Shown here piece after piece: positions 9,755-62,569 of a DNA stretch of 64,000 nucleotides. Made by a program: the position numbers and the translations under genes. Every line of letters begins with the position of its first letter. Within the stretch, counting starts at the first letter, position 1. Below the pieces are notes generated by a model that was given only the letters and a program-made list of their open reading frames with translations, did no database searches and was not told the DNA's origin. Source of the DNA: Macrostomum lignano. Its lineage: Eukaryota. The DNA is taken from NCBI GenBank assembly GCA_002269645.1, contig NIVC01000119.1:297323-361322 (forward strand), written 5' to 3'.

Positions 9755-11860
9755 GATTACTGCACTCGATAAGCTAAGGATTATTGCTCTTGGCAAACCA
9801 AGGAATACTGCACTCGATAAGCCAAGGATTATTGCTCTTGGCAAACCAAGGATTACTGCACTCGATAAGCCATGGATTATTGCTATTAATAAACCAAGGA
9901 TTACTGCACTCGATAAGCCATGGATTATTGCTATTAATAAACCATGAATTACTGCACTCGATAAGCCAAGGATTATTGCTATTAATAAACCAAGGATTAC
10001 TGCACTCGATAAACCAAGGATTATTGCTATTAATAAACCAAGGATTACTGCACTCGATAAGCCAAGGACTATTGCTATTAATAAACCAAGGATTACTGCA
10101 CTCAATAAACCAAGGACTATTGCTCTTGGCAAACCAAGGATTACTGCACTCGATAAGCCAAGGACTATTGCTCTTGGCAAACCAAGGATTACTGCACTCG
10201 ATAAGCCATGGATTATTGCTATTAATAAACCAAGGATTACTGCACTCGATAAGCCAAGGATTATTGCTATTAATAAACTAGGGATTACTGCACTCGATAA
10301 ACCAAGGATTATTGCTATTAATAAACCAAGGATTATGCACTTGGCAAACCAAGGATTACTGCACTCGATAAGCCAAGGACTATTGCTCTTGGCAAACCAA
10401 GGATTACTGCACTCGATAAGCCATGGATTATTGCTATTAATAAACCAAGGATTACTGCACTCGATAAGCCAAGGATTATTGCTATTAATAAACCAAGGAT
10501 TACTGCACTCGATAAGCCAAGGATTATTGCTATTAATAAACCAAGGATTACTGCACTCAATAAACCAAGGACTATTGCTATTAATAAACCAAGGATTACT
10601 GCACTCAATAAACCAAGGACTATTGCTCTTGGCAAACCAAGGATTACTGCACTCGATAAGCCAAGGACTATTGCTCTTGGCAAACCAAGGATTACTGCAC
10701 TCGATAAGCCATGGATTATTGCTATTAATAAACCAAGGATTACTGCACTCGATAAGCCAAGGATTATTGCTATTAATAAACCAAGGATTACTGCACTCGA
10801 TAAACCAAGGATTATGCACTTGGCAAACCAAGGATTACTGCACTCGATAAGCCAAGGATTATTGCTATTAATAAACCAAGGATTACTGCACTCAATAAAC
10901 CAAGGACTATTGCTATTAATAAACCAAGGATTACTGCACTCAATAAACCAAGGACTATTGCTCTTGGCAAACCAAGGATTACTGCACTCGATAAGCCAAG
11001 GATTATTGCTATTAATAAACCAAGGATTACTGCACTCGATAAGGCATGGATTATTGCTATTAATAAACCAAGGATTACTGCACTCGATAAGCCAAGGATT
11101 ATTGCTATTAATAAACCATGAATTACTGCACTCGATAAGCCAAGGATTATTGCTATTAATAAACCAAGGATTACTGCACTCGATAAGCCATGGATTATTG
11201 CTATTAATAAACCAAGGATTACTGCACTCGATAAACCAAGGATTATGCACTTGGCAAACCAAGGATTACTGCACTCGATAAGCCAAGGATTATTGCTATT
11301 AATAAACCAAGGATTACTGCACTCAATAAACCAAGGACTATTGCTATTAATAAACCAAGGATTACTGCACTCAATAAACCAAGGACTATTGCTCTTGGCA
11401 AACCAAGGATTACTGCACTCGATAAGCCAAGGACTATTGCTCTTGGCAAACCAAGGATTACTGCACTCGATAAGCCATGGATTATTGCTATTAATAAACC
11501 AAGGATTACTGCACTCGATAAGCCAAGGATTATTGCTATTAATAAACCAAGGATTACTGCACTCGATAAACCAAGGATTATTGCTATTAATAAACCAAGG
11601 ATTATGCACTTGGCAAACCAAGGATTACTGCACTCGATAAGCCAAGGATTATTGCTATTAATAAACCAAGGATTACTGCACTCGATAAGCCAAGGATTAT
11701 TGCTATTAATAAACCATGAATTACTGCACTCGATAAGCCAAGGATTATTGCTATTAATAAACCAAGGATTACTGCACTCGATAAGCCATGGATTATTGCT
11801 ATTAATAAACCAAGGATTACTGCACTCGATAGCCAAGGATTACTGCGCTTGATAAGCTTG
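9755..11860. repeat. 24-bp family array arranged as 48-bp dimers with higher-order repeats
   Basis: Alternating tgcactcgataagccaaggattat / tgctattaataaaccaaggattac; variant ggattatgcacttggcaaacc recurs at about 10330, 10809, 11240, 11599. Confidence 0.95.
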
Positions 11861-12195: not shown

Positions 12196-12249
12196 TAGAG
12201 AGTAGAGTTTTTTTAATTAAAGCCTTTTAACGCCAAGACAAAAAAAATT

Positions 12250-13270
12250 ATGGAAGCGTCATGTAAACAATCATACAAGCGTCATGTAAACAATCATAGA
12301 AGCGTCATGTAAAAATCATAGAAGCGTCATGTAAAAATCATAGAAGCGTCATGTAAAAATCATAGAAGCGTAATGTAAACAATCATAGAAGCGTCATGTT
12401 AAAATCATAAAAGCGTCATGTAAACAATCATAGAAGCGTCATGTAAAAAAATCATAGAAGCGTCATGTTAAAATCATAAAAGCGTCATAAAAAATCATAG
12501 AAGCGTCATGCAAGCAATCATAGAAGCGTAATGTAAACAATCATAGAAGCGTCATGTTAAAATCATACAAGCGTCATGTAAACAATCATACAAGCGTCAT
12601 GTAAACAATCATAGAAGCGTCATGTAAAAAAATCATAGAAGCGTCATGTTAAAATCATAGAAGTGTCATGTAAACAATCATAGAAGTGTCATGTAAACAA
12701 TCATAGAAGCGTCATGTAAAAATCATAGAAGTGTCATGTAAAAATCATAGAAGCGTCATGTAAACAATCATAAAAGCGTCATGTAAACAATCATAGAAGC
12801 GTCATGTATACAATCATAGAAGCGTCATGTAAACAATCATAGAAGCGTCATGTAAAAATCATAGAAGCGTCATGTAAAAATCATAGAAGCGTCATGTAAA
12901 CAATCATAAAAGCGTCATGTAAACAATCATAGAAGCGTCATGTATACAATCATAGAAGCGTCATGTAAACAATCATAGAAGCGTCATGTATACAATCATA
13001 GAAGCGTCATGTAAACAATCATAGAAGCGTCATGTAAAAATCATAGAAGCGTCATGTAAAAATCATAGAAGCGTCATGTAAAAATCATAGAAGCGTCATG
13101 TAAAAAATCATAGAAGCGTCATGTAAAAATCATAAAAGCGTCATGTAAAAAATCATAGAAGCGTCATGTAAACAATCATACAAGCGTCATGTAAACAATC
13201 ATAGAAGCGTCATGTAAAAATCATACAAGCGTCATGTAAACAAGCATAGAAGCGTCATGAAAAAATTATA
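12250..13270. repeat. About 23-bp minisatellite (atcatagaagcgtcatgtaaaca)
   Basis: Direct tandem units. Confidence 0.95.
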
Positions 13271-14226
13271 GAAGCCTCATATAAAAACTAATGAAAGTGT
13301 GTCATTTAAAAAATTAAGAAGCATCATGGAAGAATAAAAGAAGCGTAACGTAAAAATCAAAAGAAGCGTCATGTCAGACATGAAAGAAATGTCATATAAA
13401 AATTAAATGAAGCTATAGTACAGTGCTGTGCTGGGGAGAATTACTGAGACGTCAAGGCTCACAGAGAATAACTGAGATTACAGGGGGGTTTCTGAGATGT
13501 TAAAGCAAAAGTCAGAAGCTACTTCAAAGTACATGTACTTTACTTAAGTTTTTTATTGCATTCTTTGTTGGCTTGCCACGGTGGGGGGGGCGCTGATAGA
13601 AGAAGAGTCATGTAAAAATAAAAGGAGCACTATGTATACATAAAATAAAAGTCATGTCAAAGTTAAAAGATTCATTTGGGAATTGCTACGATGTCAAAGC
13701 TTGGAGGGAATCGTTATAGTGCTGTGATTCTTAAAGAAGGAATCACTTAAATGCCAAGGCTTAGGGAAGAAGAATTGCTGTGATTTCAAGGCTTTAGGTT
13801 GGGTGAAAGTTAGGTTTACGTCAGGTTTGGGTTGAGGGTTAGATTTTAGCGCGTTTCAAGGTTAACAGGGGATTTTTTAGATTTCAAGGTTTATGGGGGG
13901 CATCGCTGACATGTCAAGGCTTACGAGGGGAATCTATCTATCTATCTATAGCTGAGATGTCAAGGCTCACGGGGGAATAAATGAGATGTCAAGGCTAATG
14001 TCAGAAGCTACATGTAGTTTATTGGAAAAAAGTTATTACATTATTTGTTTGCTCCTCACGGGAGGGATCGCTGATAGAAAAAGCATAATGTAAAAAAAAA
14101 GAAGCTTCATGTCAAAGTTAAGAGATTCATTTGGGAATCCCTACGATGTCGAGGCTTGCAGGGAATCGCTATAATGCTGTAGTAGTGCTATAGACTCTTA
14201 GAGAGAATTACTGAAATTTCAATGCT

Positions 14227-16343: not shown

Positions 16344-17396
16344 ATGAGCGATCTGAAGCAGCTCAATAGCTTAGTTAGCAATCTTGAATCGGCTCTGGGT
16401 GTCTCCGGAGGCAGCGGAGGTGGCGGTGGCGCCTCCGTAGCAGCCTTCGATTCGAGTGTTGGCGCTCGCCTTACCGAGTTCGACAATGCGTCTCGTCAAG
16501 TCGGCGGCGACGTTGCCGAACTCTCGCCAATCGTACTCGACGCCTTTGCCGCCCTCCGATCTGTTCTGGTCGAAGCCTCCAACCGGCCGTCGCGTCCGAA
16601 CGACGCAGAACTGCAGCGCCTGCTCGAGCCGTTGAGCAGACGCTTGCAAAAAGTTGACGAATTTCGCAATTCGAAACGAGCCAGCGCTCAATTCAATCAC
16701 CTGAGCGCCGTGGCGGAATCCATTGGCGCCCTTGGCTGGGTGGCGCAGCCGGAGAAACCGGCGCCGTTTGTTGAGAGCCTACGAGACGCCGGCGTGTTCT
16801 ATTCGAATCGCGTGCTTAAAGAGGCTAAAGATGGCAAAGCTGGTGGCGAGGCTGGCGCCGCCTGGGCGAAGGCTTGGACAGCCGTCATCAACTCGATGAT
16901 TGCCTACGTGAAGGAGAATCACCTCACTGGCCTGGTCTGGGGCGGCTCCGGCGGCTCCTCCGGTGGTACAGCGGCCGCCAGCGCCGAGGCCACTATGGAA
17001 AGCGTTCTGCACCGTCTGGAAGCTCTGACGGCCAAGGTGAAATCTGGCGGCGCCGGTGTCAAAGCTGGCTCGGGCGATGACGCTTCTAGCAACGGTTTTG
17101 GCTCCGTTGTCGACCGGATGTCGGCTTTCACGGCCGCCACGGCGGCTCTTGACTCCGCCGATACCGCGGATGTTCGTAAAATCGTCGATATGGCCAATAT
17201 GGCTTTCCAGCTGTTGCGCAATCTGCTGGGCCAGCCCAGACCCGCTAGCGGCGGCGTTCAAAGCCTGCCAACTTTTCAACAGCTGAGCCAGAGTATCAAT
17301 CAGGCTGTTGAGTTTCGTGAGGCTAACAGGACTAGCCGGTGTTTTAATCACCTGTCCGCTGTCAGCGCCTCGCTGCCCGCCTTCGGCTGGGTTCAG
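16344..17396 (+). CDS. CAP: Adenylyl cyclase-associated protein, exon 1 (module 1 OD+HFD, then OD and most of HFD of module 2)
   Basis: [17 protein letters not shown]...FYSNRVLKE and a second [17 protein letters not shown]; donor cag|GTTTGA at 17397. Confidence 0.92.
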
Positions 17397-17446
17397 GTTT
17401 GAGCTGTTTGGCTTAGTTAGTGGCTTCTGTTCTTTATTGATAATTG

Positions 17447-17468
17447 ATGTCTGTCTGTGTCTGTCTGT

Positions 17469-17502
<34 letters not shown>

Positions 17503-17525
17503 CTGTCTGTCTGTCTGTCTGTCTG

Positions 17526-17586
<61 letters not shown>

Positions 17587-17587
17587 G

Positions 17588-17646
<59 letters not shown>

Positions 17647-17697
17647 GTCTGTCTGTCTGTCTGTACGTGTCTGTCCGTCTGTCTGTCTGTGTCTGTG

Positions 17698-17748
<51 letters not shown>

Positions 17749-17775
17749 GTCTGTCTGTGTCTATCTGTCTGTACG

Positions 17776-17816
<41 letters not shown>

Positions 17817-17989
17817 ATCTGTCTGTCTGTCTGTCTGTACGTGTCTATCCGTCTGTCTGTCTGTGTCTGTCTGTCTGTCTGTACGTGTCTGTCTGTCTAT
17901 CTGTCTGTCTGTCTGTCTGTACGTGTCTGTCCGTCTGTCTGTCTGTCCGTCTGTCCGTCTGTCTGTACGTGTCTGTCTGTCTGTCTGCC

Positions 17990-18036
<47 letters not shown>

Positions 18037-18171
18037 GTGTCCGTGTCTGTCTGTCTGTCTGTCTGTCTGCCCGTCTGTCTGTCTGTCTGTCTGTCTGTCT
18101 GCCCGTCTGTCTGTCTGTCTGTCTGTCTGTGTGTCCGTGTCTGTCTGTCTGTCTGTCTGTCTGTGTGTCCG

Positions 18172-18224
<53 letters not shown>

Positions 18225-18240
18225 CAGGGTCTGTCTGTCT
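17447..18240. repeat. (GTCT)n microsatellite in CAP intron 1
   Basis: Read directly. Confidence 0.97.
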
Positions 18241-18370
18241 ATGTGTTTTTCTATCTAACTAACTTTTCTATTCTATCTATCTCAGTCAGTAAAAACTGAA
18301 TATATCATATTTTTCCCATCGAGAATGAGTATTCTTGTCTAGCTCTCCCCTCTCCATAACCTGTCCCCAG

Positions 18371-18725
18371 ATGTCGCCAGCCCCGGCCCAGTTCGTGCAG
18401 GACATGCGAGAGTCGGGCCAGTTCTACACGGATAAAATTCTCACCGAGTACAAGCGCTCAGACACTCGTCACGTGACCTGGGCCGCCGCCTGGATTGACC
18501 TGTTGAAGGAGATGCAGGCCTACGTCAAGGCTAAGCACACCACCGGATTCGTGTTTGCTGCCGGTGGCGCCGCCGCTGCGCCCGCTGCTGCTCCCCGGCG
18601 CCGAGGGCTGGCGGGCCCCCTCCGCCGCCTCCGCCCCGCCGCCGCCGCCGCCCCCGCCTCCGCCAGCTGGTGGCGCCGACGATGGAGCCGCCAAAGCGGC
18701 CGCCCTGTTTGCGGAGATTAACCAG
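18371..18725 (+). CDS. CAP: CAP exon 2 (end of HFD2, polyproline P1, start of WH2); two apparent 1-nt deletions in GC/C runs
   Basis: Acceptor ccccAG|atgtcg; MSPAPAQFVQDMRESGQFYTDKILTEYK; poly-Pro; ALFAEINQ|GTAAGT. Confidence 0.88.
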
Positions 18726-18789
18726 GTAAGTCTCCGTCTCTATTTGCGCTGCTGAGCTGGTGTTGTAAATCCCCTCTGATCCCATTAAG

Positions 18790-19085
18790 TGTCTAAATAT
18801 CCCATCTGATCCTATTTGGGTCTAAAAATCCTATGTAATCCCATATAGTGTCTGAAAATCCCATCTGATCCCATATAGTGTCTGAAAATCTCATCTGATC
18901 CCATATAGGATCTGAAAATCCCATCTGATCCCATATAGGATCTGAAAATCTCATCTGATCCCATATAGGATCTGAAAATCCCATCTGATCCCATATAGTG
19001 TCTGAAAATCCCATCTGATCCATATAGTGTCTGAAAATCCCATCTGATCCCAATTAGGATCCGAAAATCCCACTTGATCCCATTT
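18790..19085. repeat. 30-bp minisatellite in CAP intron 2
   Basis: gtctgaaaatcccatctgatcccatatagt units. Confidence 0.93.
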
Positions 19086-19132
19086 AGGAATAAGCAATCC
19101 AAAAAATCAATTAATCTTTTTCCCGTTGCCAG

Positions 19133-19426
19133 GGCGAAGGCATCACCGGCCGACTCCGCAAGGTGCCCGATTCGGCTAAGACGCATAAAAATCCCGAACT
19201 GCGCTCCGCTAAAAAGGCGCCGCCACCTGTGGCGCCAAAACCTGGTGCTGCGAATTCGTCCGCCTCGGTTAAGAAGCCGGCCGCGCCGGCCAAGCAGCCC
19301 GTGACGGAGCTGACGGGCCAGAAGTGGACTGTGGAATACCATAAGAGCAATAGGAGTATTGTGCTGGATAATACCAGTATTAAGCAGGCTGTGTACATCT
19401 TTAAATGCGAAGGTTGCACTATTCAG
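19133..19426 (+). CDS. CAP: CAP exon 3 (WH2, P2, start of CARP)
   Basis: gccAG|GEGITGRLRKVPDSAKTHKNPELR...KWTVEYH...VYIFKCEGCTIQ|GTGAGT; 294 nt, phase 0 at both ends. Confidence 0.92.
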
Positions 19427-19504
19427 GTGAGTTTACAAGAATCCGAAACCATATCGTGTACAAATATTTCTTATTCAAACTGAGTGGTTAATATTGAAGT
19501 AATA

Positions 19505-20135
19505 AATCCCAAAGTTCCCCAAAAAAGAGAATTCCCCATAGCAAAATAATCCCCAAAAATTCCCCATAGCACAGAATCCCAAAATATCCCATAGCAAAGA
19601 ACCCCAAAAATTCCCCTTAGCAAAGAATCCCAAAATTCTCCATAGCAAAGAACCTCGAAATCCCCCATCGCAAAGAATCCCCAAATTCCCCATAGCGAAA
19701 AATCCCCAAATCCCCCATAGCGAAAAATCCCCAAATTCCTCATAGCGAAAAATCCTCAAATTCCCCATAGCGAAAAATCCCAAAATGCCTCATAGCAAAG
19801 AATCCCAAAATTATCCATAGCAAAGAACCCCAAAATCCCTCATCGCAAATAATCCCCAAATTACCCATAGCGAAAAATCCCCAAATTCCCCATAGCGAAA
19901 AATCCCCAAATTCCCCATATCGAAAAATCCCAAAATGCCTCATAGCAAAGAATCCCGAAATTTCCCATAGCGAAAAATCCAAAATTATCCATAGCAAAGA
20001 ACCCCGAAATCCCCCATCGCAAAGAACCCCGAAATCCCCCATAGCAAAAAATCCCGAAATCCCCCATAGCGAAAAATCCCCGAATTCCCCATAGCGAAAA
20101 ATCCCCAAAAATTTCCCATAACAAAAAGCCAAAAA
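19505..20135. repeat. About 20-21-bp minisatellite in CAP intron 3
   Basis: cccatagcgaaaaatccccaaa-type units. Confidence 0.9.
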
Positions 20136-20144
20136 CCCCCACAG

Positions 20145-20486
20145 GTGAAAGGCAAGGTGAACGGCATCACCCTGGACAGCTGCCGCAAATGCGCTCTGGT
20201 ATTCGATGATCTGATCAGCGCAGTGGACATTGTGAACTGTCAATCAGTCCAAACCCAATGCCTTGGCACAGTGCCAACTGTCAATATTGACAAAACTGAC
20301 GGTGTGCAAGTCTATCTAACCGAAAATTGTCGATCAACTTGTTCGATTGTGGCCGCTAAATCTTCCGAGATGAACATCTGCATCGCTCTGGAGAATGGCG
20401 ATGTCAAGGAGTACCCTCTGCCGGAGCAGTTTCGCAACGTATGGAATGGTAAAGGATTCACCACTGAGCCCACTGATCTGATCTGA
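20145..20486 (+). CDS. CAP: CAP exon 4 (CARP domain C-terminus)
   Basis: acAG|VKGKVNGITLDSC...IDKTDG...KSSEMN...EYPLPEQF, stop at 20484-20486. Confidence 0.93.
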   Translation: MKGKVNGITLDSCRKCALVFDDLISAVDIVNCQSVQTQCLGTVPTVNIDKTDGVQVYLTENCRSTCSIVAAKSSEMNICIALENGDVKEYPLPEQFRNVWNGKGFTTEPTDLI

Positions 20487-20954
20487 CTTGATGAAGCACT
20501 GCTGCCGAGTAACTAATTTTTTATATTCAACTATAATATTTATTGCTCCGCGTATCAATATGAGTATTTATTTATTTTGATCAATTTAAATCAATCATTC
20601 AATCATCTTTCATAGCAAGTTTTTTAAATGTATATTGCAGACTGTGTCAACATCGCTAAGTGGCTTGATAAATAAAATTATAGGCTGTTCGATGTTTTAG
20701 AAGTACACACGGAACTTTCTGTGCTTGGTTTCTGATCGAATATTCGTATATCAAGTCAATATTCCGTTTCTAATTCTTATTCAGAGGGCAACATGAATTC
20801 TTTTTTATTTGATGCTTAGACAGGTTTGTTACTATTTATTTCAATTTTTTTTTGTATTACCTTAGCTCGTAAAACAATAAATCTGTTGCAATGCATGCCA
20901 TTTATACAACACAATGACTATTGCTAGTTGGAAAAGTTACGGTTTTTTTAACAA

Positions 20955-22249: not shown

Positions 22250-25200
22250 ATTGATAGGGAAGAAAGAGATTAGTTAGAATTCGATGAGCAAGAGATTAAG
22301 AGAATCGATGGGGAAGAGTGATTGATGGAATAAATCGATAGGGAAGAAATCGATAGGAGAATTTGATGGGGAAGAGTGATTAATGGGAGAAATCAATGGG
22401 GAGGAGAGATTGATGGGAGAAATCGATGGGAAAGAGATTGGGGAGAAATCGATGGTGAAGAGATTGATGGGAGAAATCGATGGTGAAGAGATTGATGGGA
22501 GAAATCGATGGTGAAGAGATTGATGGGAGAAATCGATGGTGAAGAGAGTAGGGAGAAATCGATGGTGAAGAGATTGGGGAGAAATCGATGGGGAAGAGAT
22601 TGGGGAGAAATCGATGGTGAAGAGAGTAGGGAGAAATCGATGGTGAAGAGATTGGGGAGAAATCGATGGGGAAGAGATTGGGGAGAAATCGATGGTGAAG
22701 AGATTGGGGAGAAATCGATGGTGAAGAGAGTAGGGAGAAATCGATGGTGAAGAGATTGGGGAGAAATCGATGGTGAAGAGAGTAGGGAGAAATCGATGGT
22801 GAAGAGATTGGGGAGAAATCGATGGTGAAGAGAGTAGGGAGAAATCGTTGGTGAAGAGATTGATGGGAGAAATCGATGGTGAAGAGAGTAGGGAGAAATC
22901 GATGGTGAAGAGATTGGGGAGAAATCGATGGTGAAGAGTTTGATGGGAGAAATCGATGGTGAAGAGATTGATGGGAGAAATCGATGGTGAAGAGATTGAT
23001 GGGAGAAATCGATGGTGAAGAGATTGATGGGAGAAATCGATGGTGAAGAGAGTAGGGAGAAATCGATGGTGAAGAGATTGGGGAGAAATCGATGGGGAAG
23101 AGATTGGGGAGAAATCGATGGTGAAGAGATTGGGGAGAAATCGATGGTGAAGAGAGTAGGGAGAAATCGATGGTGAAGAGATTGGGGGGAAATCGATGGT
23201 GAAGAGATTGGGGAGAAATCGATGGGGAAGAGATTGGGGAGAAATCGATGGTGAAGAGATTGATGGGAGAAATCGATGGTGAAGAGATTGATGGGAGAAA
23301 TCGATGGTGAAGAGATTGATGGGAGAAATCGATGGTGAAGAGATTGATGGGAGAAATCGATGGTGAAGAGATTGGGGAGAAATCGATGGGGAAGAGATTG
23401 GGGAGAAATCGATGGTGAAGAGATTGGGGGGAGAAATCGATGGTGAAGAGAGTAGGGAGAAATCGATGGTGAAGAGATTGGGGGGAAATCGATGGTGAAG
23501 AGATTGGGGAGAAATCGATGGGGAAGAGATTGGGGAGAAATCGATGGTGAAGAGATTGATGGGAGAAATCGATGGTGAAGAGATTGATGGGAGAAATCGA
23601 TGGTAAAGAGAGTAGGGAGAAATCGATGGTGAAGAGAGTAGGGAGAAATCGATGGTGAAGAGATTGGGGAGAAATCGATGGTGAAGAGATTGGTGGGAGA
23701 AATCGATGGTGAAGAGATTGATGGGAGAAATCGATGGTGAAGAGAGTAGGGAGAAATCGATGGTGAAGAGAGTAGGGAGAAATCGTTGGTGAAGAGATTG
23801 GGGGGAGAAATCGATGGTGAAGAGAGTAGGGAGAAATCGATGGTGAAGAGATTGATGGGAGAAATCGATGGTGAAGAGATTGATGGGAGAAATCGATGGT
23901 GAAGAGAGTAGGGAGAAATCGATGGTGAAGAGATTGGGGGGAGAAATCGATGGTGAAGAGAGTAGGGAGAAATCGATGGTGAAGAGATTGGGGAGAAATC
24001 GATGGTGAAGAGAGTAGGGAGAAATCGATGGTGAAGAGATTGATGGGAGAAATCGATGGTGAAGAGATTGGGGAGAAATCGATGGTGAAGAGATTGATGG
24101 GAGAAATCGATGGTGAAGAGATTGGGGAGAAATCGATGGTGAAGAGATTGATGGGAGAAATCGATGGTGAAGAGATTGGGGAGAAATCGATAGTGAAGAG
24201 AGTAGGGAGAAATCGATGGTGAAGAGATTGGGGAGAAATCGATGGGGAAGAGATTGGGGAGAAATCGATGGTGAAGAGATTGATGGGAGAAATCGATGGT
24301 GAAGAGATTGGGGAGAAATCGATGGTGAAGAGATTGATGGGAGAAATCGATGGTGAAGAGATTGATGGGAGAAATCGATGGTGAAGAGAGTAGGGAGAAA
24401 TCGATGGTGGAGAGATTGGGGAGAAATCGATGGGGAAGAGATTGGGGAGAAATCGATGGGGAAGAGATTGGGGAGAAATCGATGGTGAAGAGATTGGGGG
24501 GAAATCGATGGTGAAGAGATTGGGGGGAAATCGATGGTGAAGAGAGTAGGGAGAAATCGATGATGAAGAGATTGGGGGAAATCGATGGTGAATAGATTGG
24601 GGAGAAATCGATGGTGAAGAGATTGGGGGGAAATCGATGGTGAAGAGATTGGGGAGAAATCGATGGGGAAGAGATTGGGGAGAAATCGATGGTGAAGAGA
24701 TTGATGGGAGAAATCGATGGTGAAGAGATTGATGGGAGAAATCGATGGTGAAGAGAGTAGGGAGAAATCGATGGTGAAGAGAGTAGGGAGAAATCGATGG
24801 TGAAGAGATTGGGGAGAAATCGATGGGGAAGAGATTGGGGAGAAATCGATGGTGAAGAGATTGGGGGGAAATCGATGGTGAAGAGATTGGGGGGAAATCG
24901 ATGGTGAAGAGAGTAGGGAGAAATCGATGGTGAAGAGAGTAGGGAGAAATCGATGGGGAAGAGATTGGGGAGAAATCGATGGGGAAGAGATTGGGGAGAA
25001 ATCGATGGTGAAGAGATTGGGGGGAAATCGATGGTGAAGAGATTGGGGGGAAATCGATGGTGAAGAGAGTAGGGAGAAATCGATGATGAAGAGATTGGGG
25101 GGAAATCGATGGTGAATAGATTGGGGAGAAATCGATGGTGAAGAGATTGGGGGAAATCGATGGTGAAGAGATTGGGGAGAAATCGATGGGGAAGAGATTG

Positions 25201-26570
25201 GGGAGAAATCGATGGTGAAGAGATTGATGGGAGAAATCGATGGTGAAGAGATTGATGGGAGAAATCGATGGTGAAGAGAGTAGGGAGAAATCGATGGTGA
25301 AGAGAGTAGGGAGAAATCGATGGTGAAGAGATTGGGGAGAAATCGATGGGAAGAGATTGGGGAGAAATCGATGGTGAAGAGATTGGGGGGAAATCGATGG
25401 TGAAGAGATTGGGGGGAAATCGATGGTGAAGAGATTGGGGGGAAATCGATGGTGAAGAGAGTAGGGAGAAATCGATGATGAAGAGATTGGGGGGAAATCG
25501 ATGGTGAATAGATTGGGGAGAAATCGATGGTGAAGAGATTGGGGGGAAATCGATGGTGAAGAGATTGGGGAGAAATCGATGGGGAAGAGATTGGGGAGAA
25601 ATCGATGGTGAAGAGATTGATGGGAGAAATCGATGGTGAAGAGATTGATGGGAGAAATCGATGGTGAAGAGAGTAGGGAGAAATCGATGGTGAAGAGAGT
25701 AGGGAGAAATCGATGGTGAAGAGATTGGGGAGAAATCGATGGTGAAGAGATTGATGGGAGAAATCGATGGTGAAGAGATTGGGGAGAAATCGATGGTGAA
25801 GAGATTGATGGGAGAAATCGATGGTGAAGAGATTGATGGGAGAAATCGATGGTGAAGAGAGTAGGGAGAAATCGATGGTGAAGAGATTGGGGGGAGAAAT
25901 CGATGGTGAAGAGAGTAGGGAGAAATCGATGGTGAAGAGATTGGGGAGAAATCGATGGTGAAGAGAGTAGGGAGAAATCGATGGTGAAGAGATTGATGGG
26001 AGAAATCGATGGTGAAGAGATTGGGGAGAAATCGATGGTGAAGAGATTGATGGGAGAAATCGATGGTGAAGAGATTGATGGGAGAAATCGATGGTGAAGA
26101 GATTGATGGGAGAAATCGATGGTGAAGAGAGTAGGGAGAAATCGATGGTGAAGAGATTGATGGGAGAAATCGATGGTAAAGAGAGTAGGGAGAAATCGAT
26201 GGTGAAGAGATTGATGGGAGAAATCGATGGTGAAGAGATTGGGGAGAAATCGATGGTGAAGAGATTGATGGGAGAAATCGATGGTGAAGAGATTGATGGG
26301 AGAAATCGATGGTGAAGAGAGTAGGGAGAAATCGATGGTGAAGAGATTGGGGAGAAATCGATGGGGAAGAGATTGGGGAGAAATCGATGGTGAAGAGATT
26401 GGGGGGAAATCGATGGTGAGGAGATTGGGGGGAAATCGATGGTGAAGAGAGTAGGGAGAAATCGATGATGAAGAGATTGGGGGGAAATCGATGGTGAATA
26501 GATTGGGGAGAAATCGATGGTGAAGAGATTGGGGAGAAATCGATGGTGAAGAGATTGGGGAGAAATCGAT
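22250..26570. repeat. 4.3-kb purine-rich 23-26-bp satellite filling the DGCR6 intron
   Basis: gggagaaatcgatggtgaagagattg units; variant gatgatgaag...gtgaatagattg recurs at about 24560, 25080, 25470, 26465. Confidence 0.97.
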
Positions 26571-26632
26571 AAAAAAGTTTTAAAAAATCGGTGCTAATTA
26601 GAAGCGCACAACACCCACCCCATCACCCCCAG

Positions 26633-27148
26633 CAAATGCACTTGGCCCTGCCAGCCGTACATCGCTCTCGGGTATCCCACGACCAAATCTGCCGCTTAGC
26701 CAATTCGCTCTTGGACGGCACCGTATTCGACATCGTTCGCGACCTGCGCGAGGTTCAGCATTTAGAAGAGAAATCCCTGTCGGAACGAAGACGCCAACTA
26801 GAGTCGGAACTGAAACTTGAACGGTCGGATCTAAGTGCCAGACAGGCGGAAGAGTTGGCCTCCATAGTTGCCGTCGGTCGGCAACGAACTGCCGAGGAGC
26901 GCCGAGTTCGACAAATTCACGAGCGTCAAACCATCGAGTTGGAGCGAACTCAAGCTGATCGGTTGAAAAAATTCGACATGAAAATTATTATGGAATTGGA
27001 CCAGAAAGTGCTCACTCAGCAGAGTACGTTAGAGAAGTCCGGCGTCCCCGGATTCTTTGTCACGAATAGTCCCAACGATATTCGAACTCAAATGATTCTG
27101 ATGGATTTTATTATGCGTTTGAGTCAGAAGAAACCGCCTCAAACGTAG
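26633..27148 (+). CDS. DGCR6: DGCR6/gonadal homolog, coding exon 2
   Basis: ccccAG|QMHLALP...LLDGTVFDIV...EVQHLEEKSL...KIIMELDQKVLTQQSTLEKSGVPGFFVT; about 209 aa in total. Confidence 0.9.
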   Translation, partial: QMHLALPAVHRSRVSHDQICRLANSLLDGTVFDIVRDLREVQHLEEKSLSERRRQLESELKLERSDLSARQAEELASIVAVGRQRTAEERRVRQIHERQTIELERTQADRLKKFDMKIIMELDQKVLTQQSTLEKSGVPGFFVTNSPNDIRTQMILMDFIMRLSQKKPPQT

Positions 27149-29467: not shown

Positions 29468-31450
29468 ATGCCGCAGGACAAGCGCAGCAGTAGCGGCAGT
29501 CGGCGCGGCCGCCTCGAGGCCACGGCCAAGCCGGGTGCTATGCGCAAAATTCTCGACGAAATGGACACCGAAGCGAAGCAGGCTAGGCGTAGCAAAAGCA
29601 AAGGAGGCGGAGATAAGGAGGATAAAGATAGGGATAGAGAGGATCGAGATCGGGATAAGGACAGGCGCGATAGTCGGCACAAAGGCAATGATAGGGAAAG
29701 AAGACACAAGGATGACAAAGAGCGGGATAGTAAGCACAGAGATGACAAAGACCGAGAAAGAAGACAACGAGACGACAAAGATCGAGACAGGAGACATAAA
29801 GACGATAAAGACCGAGACAGACGCCGTGAGGACAAAGACCGAGACAGACAAAAGGATGACAAAGATCGGGAAAAGCGGCATAAAGATGATAAAGATCGTG
29901 ACAGACATCGAGATGACAAAGATAGAGAGCGGAACCGAGACGACAAAGACCGAGAGAGGCGGCATAGAGACGATAAAGACCGAGACAGGCACCGGGATGA
30001 CAAAAACCGAGACAGGCACCGGGATGACAAAGATCGAGACAGGCACCGGGATGACAAAGACCGAGACAGGCACCGGGATGACAAAGACCGAGACAGGCAT
30101 CGTGATGACAAAGACCGAGACAGGCACCGGGATGACAAAGAGCGAGATAGGCACCGCGATGAAAGAGATCGCGACAGGCGCAAGGACAAAGACGGTGATC
30201 GGAAATCGTCTGAGCAGACAACCAAGTCCAACGGTCAAGCGGAAACAGCCGTAGCGGCGGAGGACGACTACAACTATGAAGACGATGAGTTCGAAAATTA
30301 TGACGAAGATTTCGACGACTTCAAAGACGATGATAATGAAGACGACGACGATTCAGACAAAGACCGCAAGCCGCCCGCTGCTGCAAAGACGGATAGCAAA
30401 GACCAGCAGAGAAATGTACCCGCTAGACAGCAATACGAAGATGATAGTGAAGATGATTACGATGGGCACAAAACGTCTAGTCAGCAGCAGCAACAGACGC
30501 CCAGACCCAAGGCGTTGATTGATTTCTTCGGCGCTAAGCGTCGTCAAGCCAATACGGCGGCGGCTAGTCGAACACAGCGCCGCTGGGACGAACTGTCCCG
30601 ACTAATCGATCTGGACAAAGTTTCCTACGATCTGTTCCAACTGGCTCCGCTAGAGGAATACGCGCTTTATATGCGCCAATACGGTAGAAGCAACGCTCAC
30701 CAAGCCGCTGTACAAACTAACGAAGACGCTGTCGATCGCGAAGCGATGACTGACGATATTGAATTTTCCACCCGTTGGACTCAGAATCCGCCTGGCGATC
30801 TTGTTGAATGCGCCGGAGTTGCGGCAGCCAACGATGAGGATTCTGCAGATGAAGATTATGATAGCAAAGATAAAAAGAAGCATAAAAAGAAGCAGACGGC
30901 TCAGCTGCCGTCCAAACCGATTCAACCGTCGGCCAAGTCGCTGCAGCGCACTCTGGACTTAGTTCGACGCGTCCTTGAAGAGCAGAGCCGGCCCCGGGTG
31001 CCGAACGGCAGGCGCGAAGCGGCCGGTCATTTAAGCAGCGGCTTCACACCGTTGACAGCTTCATCAACTTACGGTCCAGCGTCTCGAGCTCTGTTCGATC
31101 CTAAACGATCGGCTAAGCTGCTCACTATGCATCCGAACTCGTCCACTCTGTTGCTATGGAATGCTCACGAGCCTGAGCTGCCACTGTGCGTCCTATCCGC
31201 TCCCGGCGGCGTAGCCTGCGCTTGCTGGACACCCGACGAGTTCGTTTGCGCCGGATTAGACGACGGCGCGCTGTGCCTTTGGGATCCAACTGAGCCGGCC
31301 GAATCGCACGGACGCTACGACGCAGACGGGGTGTCGATTCGCGGACCGACTTATAGTACGGCCTGGTCGCCAGTTGGCAATCATCTGGGCGGCGGAGTTG
31401 TCGGATTGGCCGCTGTTGGTCGAGCGCTGCATTCCGGCGGCGCTTACCAG
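29468..31450 (+). CDS. DYNC2I1: Dynein-2 intermediate chain 1 (WDR60), exon 1
   Basis: Charged R/D/K N-terminus, then LIDLD..YDLFQLAPLEEYALYMRQYGRSN..AVQTNED..WTQNP and WD repeats; donor cag|GTGAGG. Confidence 0.87.
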
Positions 31451-31872
31451 GTGAGGTCGAAATATTGCATTGTCTTGCTAGTCTTTGTTGTTAAAACAAA
31501 GTGCCGTCAAAACCGGCGCGGATCAGTTCCGAAGAACTCTGCCGCAGTTATATTTTGTGTTTGATCGAAAGAATTTAAAATATTTACAGATTTCGATTTT
31601 AAATTTGCCTCATTGCATCCCAGAGGACATTGAGAACGGGGGTTCGGCCCGGAGCCCGAGGGGCTTCCGGCTCAATGTGGAAGCTGTGGAGCTTGGCTGC
31701 CCTCATCTTGAGCAGCCAAGCCACCCCCAGCTGCTTGACTCTGTCTGCGAGCATCGGCATACCTGCCAAAGTCTTTGAAACGATTTTACTAGGCTAATTA
31801 GCTGGCGAGGCTATTCATTCGTATACTCCAGCCGTTTACCCGAAATTGTATCACCCTACTTCACTTTCACAG

Positions 31873-32649
31873 TTGGTCTCCATGGACTCAAGCGGCCGAC
31901 TTCAAGCCTGGGTGGCGTCGACTCACGTCGGCCCGGCCGATCCGGCCGGCTCAGCCTCTGACTTGGGTCTTCGTCCTGGCGGCCGGGTCAGCCTGATGCG
32001 CAGCTCCCGTCTGGAACTGCCGTCAGCTTCGGCTCCTCTGCCGCCGCTCTGCATGTCCGCTGGCGCCAATGGCGACGGCGCTATCGTTGGCGGAGCCGAC
32101 GGCTGCCTGATTCGCGTCAACGTTGGCGCCGGCGGAAGCTCCGGCAGTCGGCGTTGTCATTCAATCTGCGGCGACTTCGAGCATCGCCTACCGGCTAGCG
32201 TCACGGCTATTGACGCCTCGCCGCACGGCAACGGCCTCCTGCTGATTGGCTACGCCGATGGTCACGTGCGCCTGATGACGTCATCATCGACTAGTCCGCT
32301 GCTGACTGTGCAGCCGAAGTCAGACTCGATAGTTCGCCTGCTCTGGTCGAGAAGCCGGCCGGCTGTGTTCTACTCGCTGGATTCCAGCGGTCGCCTGCTG
32401 GTGTACGACCTCACGCAGAAGAGCTCCGGTCCTGTCAGCGTTTTTGCAGAGTCTGGCGTATCGGATTTCGCACTTGGCGAAGACTACCATTCAACTGGTC
32501 GGGGCTCGAAAAGCGACCGCGCTGTGTGCGTCCTGGTCCGAGCTAATAGCGGCGAGGCGGAGGTGCACACCCTGGCTGAGACTCTGTCAGCTGCCGAGCT
32601 GGACGAAGGCTACCGATTGAGTCAGCTGATTGATCAGCTGTGCGTCTGA
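31873..32649 (+). CDS. DYNC2I1: DYNC2I1/WDR60 exon 2 (WD repeats); about 919 aa in total
   Basis: tttcacAG|LVSMDSSGRLQAWV...DLGLRPGGRVSL...WSRSRPAVFYSLD. Confidence 0.87.
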   Translation: MVSMDSSGRLQAWVASTHVGPADPAGSASDLGLRPGGRVSLMRSSRLELPSASAPLPPLCMSAGANGDGAIVGGADGCLIRVNVGAGGSSGSRRCHSICGDFEHRLPASVTAIDASPHGNGLLLIGYADGHVRLMTSSSTSPLLTVQPKSDSIVRLLWSRSRPAVFYSLDSSGRLLVYDLTQKSSGPVSVFAESGVSDFALGEDYHSTGRGSKSDRAVCVLVRANSGEAEVHTLAETLSAAELDEGYRLSQLIDQLCV

Positions 32650-34555: not shown

Positions 34556-35084
34556 TTGAGCTGCAATTCATATGGAAAGCCAGCTGCTTTATGCTGTGAA
34601 ATTTTTGTCATTCTACCTATCTTCATTCACTCGGTAATCGCATTGATATCTTGAATGGGCCGTAGAGTTCCGGTTATATATTTCTGTTTCCTGTCAGTCG
34701 AACAGATGCTTTTGCCATCAAATACCAGAAATTGAAGTCATCAAAAACAGGCTTGGCTCAGCAGAGGATGAATATTAGAATACGAAAGAGACGGACAGCT
34801 CACTAAAAAAGCTAGTTTCTTTCAGTCTGTTCAATTGAACTGGAACACACTCAGTGGTTAGGGCGGCCTATTCATAGTCCATCTTTGGTATTCACCCTGC
34901 ACTCTGCAGGTTGATTGCGTGCCTGATTACAGCATCGCTTTCTGATGAGATCAAATCAATCAAATTATCAAGATTGTTTTGAGTTTGTTTTATTGATTGA
35001 AGATTACTGATTTGTCTTCATTTATCTGCCGTTGTGTGAATGTCAAATATCAATAAATCGTCTGTATCTACCTCAATAAACAAT

Positions 35085-38000
35085 ATCTACGTACCTCAAT
35101 AATATATATCTGTCTCCATTATCCATATCTACCTCAATAATCAATATCCACCTCAATAATCAATATCTACCTCAATAATCAATATCCACCTCAATAATCA
35201 ATATCCACCTCAATAATCCATATCTACCTCAATAATCTACCTCAATAATCCATATCTACCTCAATAATCCATATCTACCTCAATAATCCATATCTACCTC
35301 AATTATCCATATCTACCTCAATAATCCATATCTACCTCAATAATCCATATCTACCTCAATAATCCATATCCACCTCAATAATCCATATCTACCTCAATAA
35401 TCCATATCCAACTTAATAATCTATATCTACCTCAATAATCCATATCTACCTCAATAATCCATATCTACCTCAATAATCCATATCCACCTCAATAATCCAT
35501 ATCTACCTCAATAATCCATATCTACCTCAATAATCCATATCTAACTCAATAATCCATATCTAATTCAATAATCAATATCTACCTCAATAATCTACCTCAA
35601 TAATCCATATCTACCTCAATAATCCATATCTACCTCAATAATCCATATCTACCTCAATAATCCATATCCACCTCAATAATCCATATCTACCTCAATAATC
35701 CATATCTACCTCAATAATCCATATCTACCTTAATAATCCATATCTACCTCAATAATCCATATCTACCTCAATAATCCATATCTACCTCAATAATCCATAT
35801 CTACCTCAATAATCCATATCTACCTCAATAATCCATATCTACCTCAATAATCCATATCTACCTCAATAATCCATATCTACCTCAATAATCCATATCTAAT
35901 TCAATAATCAATATCTACCTCAATAATCAATATTTACCTCAATAATCCATATCTACCTCAATAATCCATATCTACCTCAATAATCCATATCCACCTTAAT
36001 AATCCATATCTACCTTAATAATCCATATCTACCTCAATAATCCATATCTACCTCAATAATCCATATCTACCTCAATAATCCATATCTACCTTAATAATCC
36101 ATATCTACCTCAATAATCCATATCTACCTCAATAATCCATATCTACCTCAATAATCCATATCTACCTTAATAATCCATATCTACCTTAATAATCGATATC
36201 TACCTCAATAATCCATATCTACCTCAATAATCTATATCTGTCTCCATTATCCATATCTACCTCAATAATCTATATCTGTCTCCATTATCCATATCTACCT
36301 CAATAATCTATATCTGTCGCCATTATCCATATCTACCTCAATAACTGTTATCTACATGTACCTCTATTATCCATATCTACCTTAATAATCCATATCTACC
36401 TCAATAATCCATATCTACCTCAATAATCCATATCTACCTCAATAATCCATATCTACCTCAATAATCCATATCTACCTCAATAATCCATATCTACCTTAAT
36501 AATCCATATCTACCTCAATAATCTATATCTACCTCAATAATCCATATCTACCTCAATAATCTATATCTGTCTCCATTATCCATATCTACCTCAATAACTG
36601 TTATCTACATGTACCTCTATTATCCATATCTACCTCAATAATCCATATCTACCTCAATAATCCATATCTACCTCAATAATCCATATCTACCTCAATAATC
36701 CATATCTACCTCAATAATCCATATCTACCTTAATAATCCATATCTACCTCAATAATCTATATCTACCTCAATAATCCATATCCACCTCAATAATTCATAT
36801 CCACCTCAATAATCCATATCTACCTCAATAATCCATATCTGTCTCCATTATCCATATCTACCTCAATAACTGTTATCTACCTCAATAATTCATATCCACC
36901 TCAATAATCCATATCTACCTCAATAATCCATATCTACCTCAATAATCCATATCTACCTCAATAATCCATATCCACCTCAATAATCCATATCTACCTCAAT
37001 AATCCATATCTACCTCAATAATCAATATCCACCTCAATAATCCATATCTACCTCAATAATCAATATCTACCTCAATAATCAATATCTACCTCAATAATCT
37101 ATATCTACCTCAATAATCCATATCTACCTCAATAATCCATATCTACCTCAATAATCCATATCTACCTCAATAATCGATATCTACCTCAATAATCCATATC
37201 TAACTCAATAATCCATATCTACCTCAATAATCCATATCTACCTCAATAATCCATATCTACCTCAATAATCCATATCTACCTCAATAATCCATATCTACCT
37301 CAATAATCCATATCTACCTCAATAATCCATATCTACCTCAATAATCCATATCTACCTCAATAATCCATATCTACCTCAATAATCCATATCTACCTCAATA
37401 ATCCATATCTACCTCAATAATCCATATCTACCTCAATAATCCATATCTACCTCAATAATCCATATCTACCTCAATAATCCATATCTACCTCAATAATCTA
37501 TATCTACCTCAATAATCCATATTTACTTCAATAATCTATATCTACCTCAATAATCCATATCTACCTCAATAATCTATATCTGTCTCCATTATCCATATCT
37601 ACCTCAATAATCCATATCTATCTCAATAATCATATCTACCTCAATAATCCATATCTACCTCAATAATCCATATCCACCTCAATAATCCATATCTACCTCA
37701 ATAATCCATATCTACCTCAATAATCGATATCTACCTTAATAATCCATATCTACCTCAATAATCCATATCTACCTCAATAATCCATATCTACCTTAATAAT
37801 CAATATCTACCTCAATAATCTATATCTACCTCAATAATCCATATCTACCTCAATAATCCATATCTACCTCAATAATCCATATCTACCTCAATAATCCATA
37901 TCTACCTCAATAATCCATATCTACCTCAATAATCCATATCTACCTCAATAATCCATATCTACCTCAATAATCTATATCTACCTCAATAATCCATATCCAC

Positions 38001-50735: not shown

Positions 50736-50739
50736 GTGA

Positions 50740-62554: not shown

Positions 62555-62569
62555 CGGTTACATTGGACT

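What the first reader, a model, noticed from the sequence alone, without database searches (positions are those of the whole stretch)
16344..20486. CAP/Srv2 with a tandemly duplicated N-terminal module (OD-HFD-OD-HFD-P1-WH2-P2-CARP)
Seen: the spliced ORF (about 681 aa) contains two complete helical folded domains, each with FNHLSAV..GWV, FY.(N/D)(R/K)(V/I)L.E and W..YVK..H.TG, and each preceded by a leucine-rich oligomerisation-type helix (LVSNLESAL; [12 protein letters not shown]). Known: canonical CAP is about 470-530 aa with one HFD; HFDs assemble into higher-order (hexameric) wheels that act with cofilin to depolymerise actin pointed ends. Inference: a covalent HFD tandem could change oligomer stoichiometry (for example three chains giving six HFDs) or pair two specialised HFDs. 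I know of no described CAP with this architecture, but I cannot search.
Basis: partly seen in the sequence, partly recalled or inferred. Interest (0 to 1): 0.8.

Follow-up and report, generated by a model that had tools for sequence, protein, structure and literature searches.

The report
Flatworm CAP gene with two HFDs
This is the actin-recycling gene CAP/Srv2 of the flatworm Macrostomum lignano. It really carries two copies of its filament-end-binding domain in one chain, but the layout recurs in many other eukaryotes and the reading frame is broken once in this assembly.

Summary
The locus at 16344-20486 (+) is the CAP/Srv2 gene of Macrostomum lignano (contig NIVC01000119.1). Exon 1 is one 351-codon ORF. 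It encodes helix-HFD1-linker-helix and the first half of HFD2. Exon 2 completes HFD2.

Both HFDs are confirmed:
- Pfam CAP_N matches twice.
- An HMM built without these sequences scores 174 and 152 bits.
- AlphaFold2 gives two confident six-helix bundles.
- The F-Y actin-contact pair is kept in both.

The modules are only 36% identical, so the duplication is old. The RNA-based GenBank model starts 9 nt upstream of the ATG, so module 1 is transcribed.

Two corrections are needed. First, the "681-aa spliced ORF" does not exist as written. Exon 2 is 355 nt, and the frame changes once in an 88% GC proline tract. The GenBank protein therefore stops at 470 aa without CARP. This is probably an assembly indel, because three public models read the tract differently and exons 3-4 are intact. 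Second, the architecture is not unique. UniProt holds a 660-aa model of this protein, and about 30 other cluster representatives carry 2-5 HFDs, 8 of them with CARP.

No paper found describes such proteins. Verdict: a real, modestly interesting variant of a known family.

The parts
16344..17396 (+). Exon 1: one 351-codon ORF. It encodes OD1, HFD1, the linker, OD2 and the first half of HFD2.
   Evidence: 0 stops in frame, 11 and 17 in the other frames. It is identical to GenBank PAA90257.
16350..16394 (+). N-terminal leucine-rich helix (OD1-type, residues 3-17).
   Evidence: AlphaFold2 helix 3-17 at low confidence. It resembles the N-terminal L..RLE helices of other CAPs.
16443..16940 (+). HFD1 (residues 34-199). 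It is the more canonical copy and has no intron.
   Evidence: 174 bits against an independent HFD HMM. E 1.3e-36 to human CAP1 9q7o_W. It keeps 33 of 41 conserved columns, and 18 of 20 in the actin-binding helices.
16971..17045 (+). Inter-domain helix (OD2-type, residues 210-234). Met-218 aligns with the start Met of canonical CAPs.
   Evidence: AlphaFold2 helix 210-234, pLDDT 50-63. Alignment of module 1 with module 2.
17097..17396 (+). HFD2, first half (residues 252-351).
   Evidence: Takifugu CAP1 residues 61-138 align here.
17397..18370 (+). Intron 1 (phase 0, GT..AG), mostly a (TGTC)n microsatellite.
   Evidence: It is spliced out in the RNA-based GenBank model.
18371..18725 (+). Exon 2 (355 nt). 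It holds the second half of HFD2 (to about 18556), then the Pro/Ala-rich P1 tract and the start of WH2. It has one net frame change in the 88% GC tract, and the HFD2 frame ends in a stop at 18719-18721.
18726..19132 (+). Intron 2 (phase 0, GTAAGT..CAG), filled with a 30-nt tandem repeat.
19133..19426 (+). Exon 3: the rest of WH2 (GEGITGRLRKV...THKNPELR), P2, and the start of CARP.
   Evidence: Takifugu residues 255-341 align here.
19427..20144 (+). Intron 3 (phase 0, GTGAGT..CAG), filled with a 25-nt tandem repeat.
20145..20486 (+). Exon 4: CARP domain and C-terminus, with the stop at 20484-20486.
   Evidence: CAP_C PF08603, E 2.8e-60. 54-56% identity to mollusc CAPs.
20671..20676 (+). AATAAA, a candidate polyadenylation signal 185 nt after the stop.
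   Evidence: sequence only.

Best explanation
This is the cyclase-associated protein (CAP/Srv2) gene of Macrostomum lignano, apparently the only CAP in its public protein sets.

**What happened.** An ancient duplication of the whole N-terminal module (short helix plus helical folded domain) gave a chain of OD-HFD1-OD-HFD2-P1-WH2-P2-CARP, about 680 residues long.

**How it works (inferred).** Each HFD binds the pointed face of a cofilin-loaded terminal actin subunit, as in canonical CAP. Two HFDs joined by a roughly 50-residue flexible linker let a single chain occupy both terminal subunits. That raises avidity and doubles the number of HFD arms per oligomer. The C-terminal WH2-CARP half recharges the released monomer as usual.

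**The frame change.** The single frame change in exon 2 is most likely an uncorrected indel error in a Canu/Pilon PacBio assembly, not a feature of the gene.

**Shown versus inferred.** Shown here: gene structure, two intact HFD folds, conservation of actin-contact residues, and RNA-based annotation covering module 1. Inferred: the mechanism, the oligomeric state, and the assembly-error reading of the frame change.
For: **Two HFDs**
-.
- The modules are 36% identical to each other (E 3e-31). Each is 40-45% identical to animal HFDs. This is an old duplication, not an assembly duplicate.

**Actin-contact residues**
- The F162/Y163 pair that Kotila 2019 mutated to abolish actin binding (PMC6876575) is kept in both modules. 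So is R118. E119 is kept in module 2 and is N in module 1.
- In the three actin-binding helices (human P107-Y172; PMC13048244), module 1 keeps 18 of 20 conserved columns and module 2 keeps 14 of 20. Identity to Takifugu CAP1 there is 56% and 53%.

**Transcription**
- The GenBank annotation of NIVC01 comes from a genome-guided transcriptome with TransDecoder ORFs (PMC5730564).
- Its CDS starts 9 nt upstream of ATG 16344 and splices intron 1.

**Mechanism (from the literature)**
- A monomeric HFD needs more than 20-fold higher concentration, and GST-dimerised HFD restores activity.
- Binding of the second HFD displaces the first subunit, and activity rises from monomer to tetramer.

**Frame change as an assembly error**
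- The tract is 88% GC with four C4-5 runs.
- The three public models (PAA90257, A0A1I8GT03, A0A1I8F693) each read it differently.
- Exons 3-4 are stop-free, strongly conserved and have good splice sites.
- No other Macrostomum CAP with CARP was found.
Against: - The assembled sequence does not encode the full-length protein. The only GenBank model ends after HFD2.
- I could not inspect reads or transcripts directly.
- Expression level, 5' ends and possible isoforms lacking module 1 are unknown.
- Module 2 has lost several near-universal residues: the IGGDV motif, the E of SAVSES and the W of GLxW. It may bind actin more weakly or differently.
- No other Macrostomum or flatworm sequence with two HFDs was available to show conservation. 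Neodermatan CAPs are single-HFD.
- The oligomerisation helices are predicted with low confidence only.
Confidence: 0.72

Rival explanations
1. The frame change is real. This copy then encodes a 468-470-aa N-CAP-only protein (OD-HFD-OD-HFD) without WH2/CARP, or it is a recently disabled homeologous copy in this partly duplicated genome.
For: - The assembly was Pilon-polished with DNA and RNA reads, yet it keeps the frame change, and the RNA-based CDS ends at the stop.
- The DV1 line carries 180 Mb of duplicated blocks at 95% identity or more, so a spare copy could decay.
- Multi-HFD proteins without CARP exist as complete ORFs elsewhere: Nolandella with 4 HFDs, Lithocolla with 3, Porphyridium with 5.
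Against: - Exons 3-4 show no decay: 211 stop-free codons, CAP_C E 2.8e-60, intact phase-0 splice sites.
- The C part has no start codon of its own before the CARP domain.
- The three public models disagree exactly in this 88% GC tract.
- No other CARP-bearing CAP of M. lignano was found.
Confidence: 0.15
2. Module 1 is optional. An internal 5' end (promoter or spliced-leader acceptor) upstream of Met-218 yields a canonical single-HFD CAP as the main product, and the two-HFD form is a minor isoform.
For: - Met-218 ([13 protein letters not shown]) aligns with the start Met of canonical CAPs.
- M. lignano trans-splices about 39% of its genes.
- Module 1 is intronless, as if added as a block.
Against: - The annotated transcript starts upstream of module 1.
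- There is no stop codon, no AT-rich or pyrimidine tract, and no drop in GC3 between the modules. GC3 is 0.64, 0.68 and 0.62.
- Module 1 is the better conserved of the two HFDs. That is unexpected for a dispensable leader.
Confidence: 0.1
3. The tandem is an artefact: a mis-assembly or a gene-model fusion of two neighbouring CAP genes.
For: The M. lignano genome is hard to assemble and highly repetitive.
Against: - Both modules lie in one uninterrupted 351-codon ORF, so no gene model is needed to join them.
- They are only 36% identical, so this is not a collapsed or duplicated read pile.
- The same layout appears in models from the independent ML2 assembly.
Confidence: 0.03

Closest known systems
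Canonical CAP1/Srv2 (mouse and human CAP1; PDB 6RSQ, 6RSW, 9Q7O, 9Y9J)
   Same: - It has the same domains in the same order: N-terminal helix, HFD, polyproline, WH2, P2, CARP.
- One HFD bundle of the model superposes on 6rsq_A with TM 0.94 and rmsd 1.1 A.
- The actin-contact F-Y pair is conserved.
- The CARP part is 50% identical to Takifugu CAP1.
   Different: - The helix-plus-HFD module is present twice in one chain.
- The protein is about 680 residues rather than about 420-530.
- The second HFD has lost several near-universal residues.
Artificial HFD dimers and oligomers (GST-HFD in Kotila 2019; OD swaps cited in PMC13048244)
   Same: Two HFDs are held together so that both terminal pointed-end subunits can be engaged. 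This is the property shown experimentally to lower the concentration needed.
   Different: - Here the pair is covalent, in series, and natural.
- The two HFDs differ from each other (36% identity).
- The native N-terminal helices and the C-terminal half are retained.
Multi-HFD CAP-like proteins of other eukaryotes
   Same: - These are tandem arrays of 2-5 CAP_N domains.
- Pygsuia and two Logan ORFs share the OD-HFD-OD-HFD layout.
- Eight representatives carry CARP on the same chain.
- Examples with sources: Pygsuia biforma (OD-HFD-OD-HFD), Rigifila, Lithocolla (3), Nolandella (4), Porphyridium KAA8499829 (5), Compsopogon (4), Diplonema ambulator and Apiculatamorpha (2 + CARP), Namystynia (4 + CARP), and Caenorhabditis auriculariae CAD6197962 (2 + CARP).
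   Different: - They have independent origins. In Pygsuia, Lithocolla, C. auriculariae and the Logan ORFs, the modules of one protein are each other's closest relatives.
- Many lack CARP or the inter-domain helix.
- Only the nematode model is from an animal.
- None is described in a paper I could find.
Twinfilin (two ADF-H domains in tandem). This analogy rests on general knowledge and was not tested here.
   Same: It is an actin-turnover factor that works through two covalently linked copies of one actin-binding fold.
   Different: It has an unrelated fold and a different binding site on actin.

Membership tests
CAP/Srv2 (cyclase-associated protein) | Helical folded domain (Pfam CAP_N, PF21938) | tested here: met
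   It is present twice. Pfam E 2.4e-84 with 2 stretches. An independent HMM scores 174 and 152 bits. AlphaFold2 bundles and the Foldseek match to 6rsq.
CAP/Srv2 (cyclase-associated protein) | Actin-contact residues of the HFD (mouse F162/Y163, R118/E119; helices P107-Y172) | tested here: met
   F-Y and R are kept in both modules. E is kept in module 2 and is N in module 1. Module 1 keeps 18 of 20 and module 2 keeps 14 of 20 conserved columns.
CAP/Srv2 (cyclase-associated protein) | N-terminal oligomerisation helix (coiled coil) | tested here: inconclusive
   Leucine-rich helices at residues 3-17 and 210-234 are predicted only at low to moderate confidence. Oligomerisation itself cannot be tested with these tools.
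CAP/Srv2 (cyclase-associated protein) | Polyproline P1, WH2 motif and P2 between the two halves | tested here: met
   PPPPPPPPPP...AALFAEINQ|GEGITGRLRKV...THKNPELR...APPPVAPKP is readable across exons 2 and 3. It aligns with Takifugu CAP1 residues 255-341. No dedicated WH2 model was run.
CAP/Srv2 (cyclase-associated protein) | C-terminal CARP beta-helix domain (Pfam CAP_C, PF08603) | tested here: met
   E 2.8e-60, profile positions 1-156 of 157.
CAP/Srv2 (cyclase-associated protein) | N and C halves in one continuous reading frame | tested here: not met
   There is one net frame change inside exon 2 of this assembly. It is probably an assembly indel, but this was not verified with reads.
CAP/Srv2 (cyclase-associated protein) | Cofilin-dependent pointed-end depolymerisation and nucleotide exchange on actin | not testable with these tools
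   These are biochemical properties. They are inferred only from domain and residue conservation.
Multi-HFD CAP-like proteins (database-only group, undescribed) | Two or more complete CAP_N domains in one chain | tested here: met
   About 30 other representatives share this feature.
Multi-HFD CAP-like proteins (database-only group, undescribed) | Common descent of the duplication with other multi-HFD proteins | tested here: inconclusive
   The NJ tree gives 5-30% support for any placement of the two M. lignano modules. Several other lineages clearly duplicated independently.

The most novel reading that the evidence does not exclude
The two-HFD protein is the flatworm's only, obligate CAP. Its two diverged HFDs have divided the work: one is tuned for the ultimate and the other for the penultimate pointed-end subunit, or for interface 1 versus interface 2 of Kotila 2019. 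More broadly, covalent HFD arrays evolved independently many times in eukaryotes as an unrecognised alternative to coiled-coil oligomerisation for setting CAP valency. That would give natural test cases for the unsettled tetramer-versus-hexamer and 'two-HFD' models.
Probability: 0.3. Interest if true: 0.6.

Novelty: new variant of a known kind. Interest (0 to 1): 0.4.

Why it matters
Current models hold that CAP needs at least two HFDs on the two terminal subunits to pry off the pointed-end subunit. They also hold that activity scales with the number of HFD arms per oligomer, while the native oligomer size is still disputed.

A natural CAP with two different HFDs in series, from a tractable, transgenic animal model, is a ready-made comparison for those models. 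So are the many independent multi-HFD arrays in protists. These cases show that HFD valency is an evolvable parameter.

The finding also flags an annotation error. The GenBank protein lacks its WH2-CARP half.

It does not reveal a new kind of system.

Tried and rejected
1. **A mini-intron to restore the frame in exon 2.** The only short GT..AG candidate of length 3n+1 (55 nt) would delete the conserved residues after H-T-T-G. It is also extremely GC-rich, whereas the real introns are 39-48% GC. Rejected.
2. **Dating the duplication with a tree of HFD modules.** NJ with 100 bootstraps left both M. lignano modules unplaced, with 5-30% support.
3. **Looking for the architecture in other Macrostomum species or other flatworms.** Three word-indexed searches and one exhaustive profile search returned only M. 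lignano entries. Neodermatan CAPs are single-HFD.
4. **Looking for expression data for Mlig023315 or CAP.** Nothing turned up in the supplements of three M. lignano papers or in full text.
5. **Looking for any paper on tandem, multiple or duplicated HFDs.** Nothing relevant was found in the open-access library. Subscription literature was not searched.
6. **A second CAP copy in the window.** There is none.
7. **Identifying the organisms behind the Logan and metatranscriptome multi-HFD ORFs** (P0125, P0126, P0130, P0134 and others). The sources give no names.
Full report
**What is there.** The region 16344-20486 (+) holds a four-exon gene: 16344-17396, 18371-18725, 19133-19426 and 20145-20486. 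Its three introns are all phase 0 with cag|GT...cag| borders, and each is filled with a tandem repeat. Exons run at 49-66% GC with GC3 of 0.57-0.78. Introns and flanks run at 34-48% GC. An AATAAA lies 185 nt after the stop.

The window comes from Macrostomum lignano, assembly Mlig_3_7, contig NIVC01000119.1. GenBank protein PAA90257 (BOX15_Mlig023315g1, 'partial', 470 aa) is 100% identical to the translation of exon 1 plus exon 2. The neighbours are ordinary host genes: DGCR6, a WD40 protein and a DEG/ENaC channel. No second CAP copy lies in the window.

**Checking the observation.** The tandem is real.
- Exon 1 alone is a 351-codon ORF. It has no stop in frame, against 11 and 17 stops in the other frames. 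It contains a short leucine-rich helix, a complete HFD, a Gly/Ser/Ala linker, a second leucine-rich helix and the first half of a second HFD. Exon 2 completes the second HFD.
- Pfam finds CAP_N twice (E 2.4e-84) and CAP_C once in the downstream exons (E 2.8e-60).
- An HFD profile built from 26 other CAPs, without the window's own modules, scores residues 34-199 at 174 bits and residues 274-413 at 152 bits.
- AlphaFold2 on the N-terminal 426 residues gives two six-helix bundles (29-192 and 252-406), mostly at pLDDT above 90. It also gives helices at 3-17 and 210-234 and disordered linkers.
- Foldseek returns only CAP HFD structures as significant hits. The best is 6rsq_A, with TM 0.94 and rmsd 1.1 A.

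The 'spliced ORF of about 681 aa' is not an ORF in this sequence. Exon 2 is 355 nt. The end of HFD2 is in one frame, and the polyproline/WH2 segment (…PPPPPPPPPPAGGADDGAAKAAALFAEINQ), which must join exon 3, is in another. In the HFD2 frame a stop follows at 18719-18721, which is where the GenBank protein ends. So there is one net frame change, inside a tract of about 120 nt that is 88% GC and has four runs of 4-5 C.

A mini-intron is not a credible fix. I judge an assembly indel to be the most likely cause, for four reasons:
- Mlig_3_7 is a Canu PacBio assembly polished with Pilon (PMC5730564).
- The three public protein models of this gene each read this tract in a different combination of frames. 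They are PAA90257, UniProt A0A1I8GT03 (660 aa) and A0A1I8F693 (460 aa).
- Exons 3 and 4 are stop-free and 54-56% identical to mollusc CAPs.
- No other CARP-bearing CAP of M. lignano appeared in any search.

A true frameshift in one copy of this partly duplicated genome cannot be excluded without reads.

**Is module 1 transcribed?** The GenBank annotation of NIVC01 was made from a genome-guided transcriptome (StringTie/TACO/TBONE), with ORFs called by TransDecoder (PMC5730564). Its CDS begins 9 nt upstream of ATG 16344 and removes intron 1 exactly as in my model. At least one RNA-supported transcript therefore includes module 1 and joins it to HFD2.

Nothing in the sequence between the modules suggests an internal start site. 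There is no stop, no AT-rich stretch and no change in GC3. Even so, Met-218 aligns with the start Met of canonical CAPs, so a shorter isoform cannot be ruled out.

**Age and state of the two copies.** The modules are 36% identical over 205 residues (E 3e-31). Each is 40-45% identical to animal HFDs. The duplication is therefore old and not an assembly artefact.

Both copies keep the F-Y pair whose mutation abolishes actin binding in mouse CAP1, and the Arg of the R118/E119 ion pairs (PMC6876575). Within the three helices that contact actin (human P107-Y172; PMC13048244), module 1 keeps 18 of 20 conserved columns and module 2 keeps 14 of 20. Identity to a vertebrate CAP1 there is 56% and 53%, well above the whole-domain values.

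Module 1, the upstream and intronless copy, is the more canonical (33 of 41 conserved columns). Module 2 keeps 27 of 41. It has lost the IGGDV motif of the first helix, the Glu of SAVSES and the Trp of GLxW. An NJ tree could not place either module.

**How it most likely works.** In canonical CAP the HFD binds the pointed face of terminal, cofilin-loaded subunits.
- A monomeric HFD needs more than 20-fold higher concentration than oligomeric N-CAP. A GST-dimerised HFD restores potency (PMC6876575).
- Cryo-EM shows that the second HFD displaces the first subunit, by about 7.6 A with cofilin. Activity rises from monomer to tetramer, and human CAP-actin behaves as a tetramer (PMC13048244).

A chain with two HFDs joined by about 50 residues (a 25-residue helix plus disordered segments) could place both HFDs on one filament end by itself. 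It would also double the arms per oligomer. The WH2-CARP half would recycle the released monomer as usual. This step is inference from homology. Neither oligomeric state nor actin binding was or could be tested here. The greater divergence of module 2 leaves room for a division of labour between the two HFDs.

**Comparison with what is known.** The family assignment is secure. Every defining domain is present, and the one failed test is the continuity of the frame in this assembly.

The architecture is not new to the databases. UniProt A0A1I8GT03 is a 660-aa two-HFD model of this very protein. An exhaustive profile search of 1.84 billion cluster representatives with an HFD-only profile found 2421 hits. 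Those with the highest scores are multi-HFD proteins. After re-annotation with my own HFD and CARP profiles, about 30 representatives have 2-5 near-complete HFDs, and 8 of them have CARP on the same chain.

The named sources are:
- Porphyridium purpureum (5 HFDs) and Compsopogon (4)
- Nolandella (4)
- Lithocolla (3)
- Pygsuia (OD-HFD-OD-HFD) and Rigifila (2)
- Namystynia (4 + CARP)
- Diplonema ambulator and Apiculatamorpha (2 + CARP)
- one Caenorhabditis auriculariae gene model (2 + CARP)

In several of these the modules of one protein are each other's closest relatives, which implies independent duplications. Parasitic flatworm CAPs are single-HFD. I found no paper that mentions CAP in Macrostomum, or tandem, multiple or duplicated HFDs. 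A 2020 review gives only the canonical architecture (PMC7543520). The library searched is open-access only.

**Verdict.** Two HFDs: yes. The architecture and transcription of module 1: yes. Uniqueness: no. It is a new variant of a known family. It is already in the databases but undescribed, and it is one of many parallel cases. Interest is moderate (0.4). The value lies less in this gene alone than in the pattern of recurrent covalent HFD arrays, which bears directly on the current two-HFD and valency models of CAP action.

Noticed in passing
Not in the window; proteins P0107-P0135, P0152, P0176 and others: Proteins with 2-5 tandem CAP_N domains recur across eukaryotes: red algae, Amoebozoa, a nucleariid, a breviate, CRuMs, diplonemids, a prokinetoplastid and a nematode model. 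Several are complete ORFs with no CARP domain at all. No paper describing them was found.
   Followed up: partly
window 18371-20486: The GenBank CDS PAA90257 stops after HFD2. Exons 3-4, which encode WH2-P2-CARP, are therefore unannotated coding sequence. The two UniProt models of the same gene read the Pro/Ala tract in yet other frames.
   Followed up: yes
window 17448-18240, 18767-19088, 19530-20127: All three introns of the CAP gene consist almost wholly of tandem repeats: (TGTC)n of about 790 bp, a 30-mer x11 and a 25-mer x24.
   Followed up: no
window 22385-26570, 35065-39033, 9755-11855, 12242-13403 and many more: The window is packed with long satellite arrays, for example a 26-mer x157 and a 19-mer x209 with extreme GC skew. 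This fits the repeat-rich M. lignano genome.
   Followed up: no
window 26591-27148 (+), 29468-32649 (+), 48968-50773 (+): The neighbouring host genes are a DGCR6 homologue (Pfam E 1.7e-40), a WD40-repeat protein with a 27-nt coding repeat, and a single-exon 601-aa DEG/ENaC (ASC) channel ORF (E 2.1e-45).
   Followed up: partly
window 61812-62591 (-): An ORF carries a C-terminal RNase H match (Pfam E 5.3e-07). It is probably a fragment of a retroelement. Its state was not examined.
   Followed up: no
window 16995-16997 (Met-218) and exon 1 as a whole: The Met that opens the second module aligns with the start Met of canonical CAPs. Module 1 has no intron, whereas module 2 is split by intron 1. 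This suggests module 1 was added upstream as a block.
   Followed up: partly
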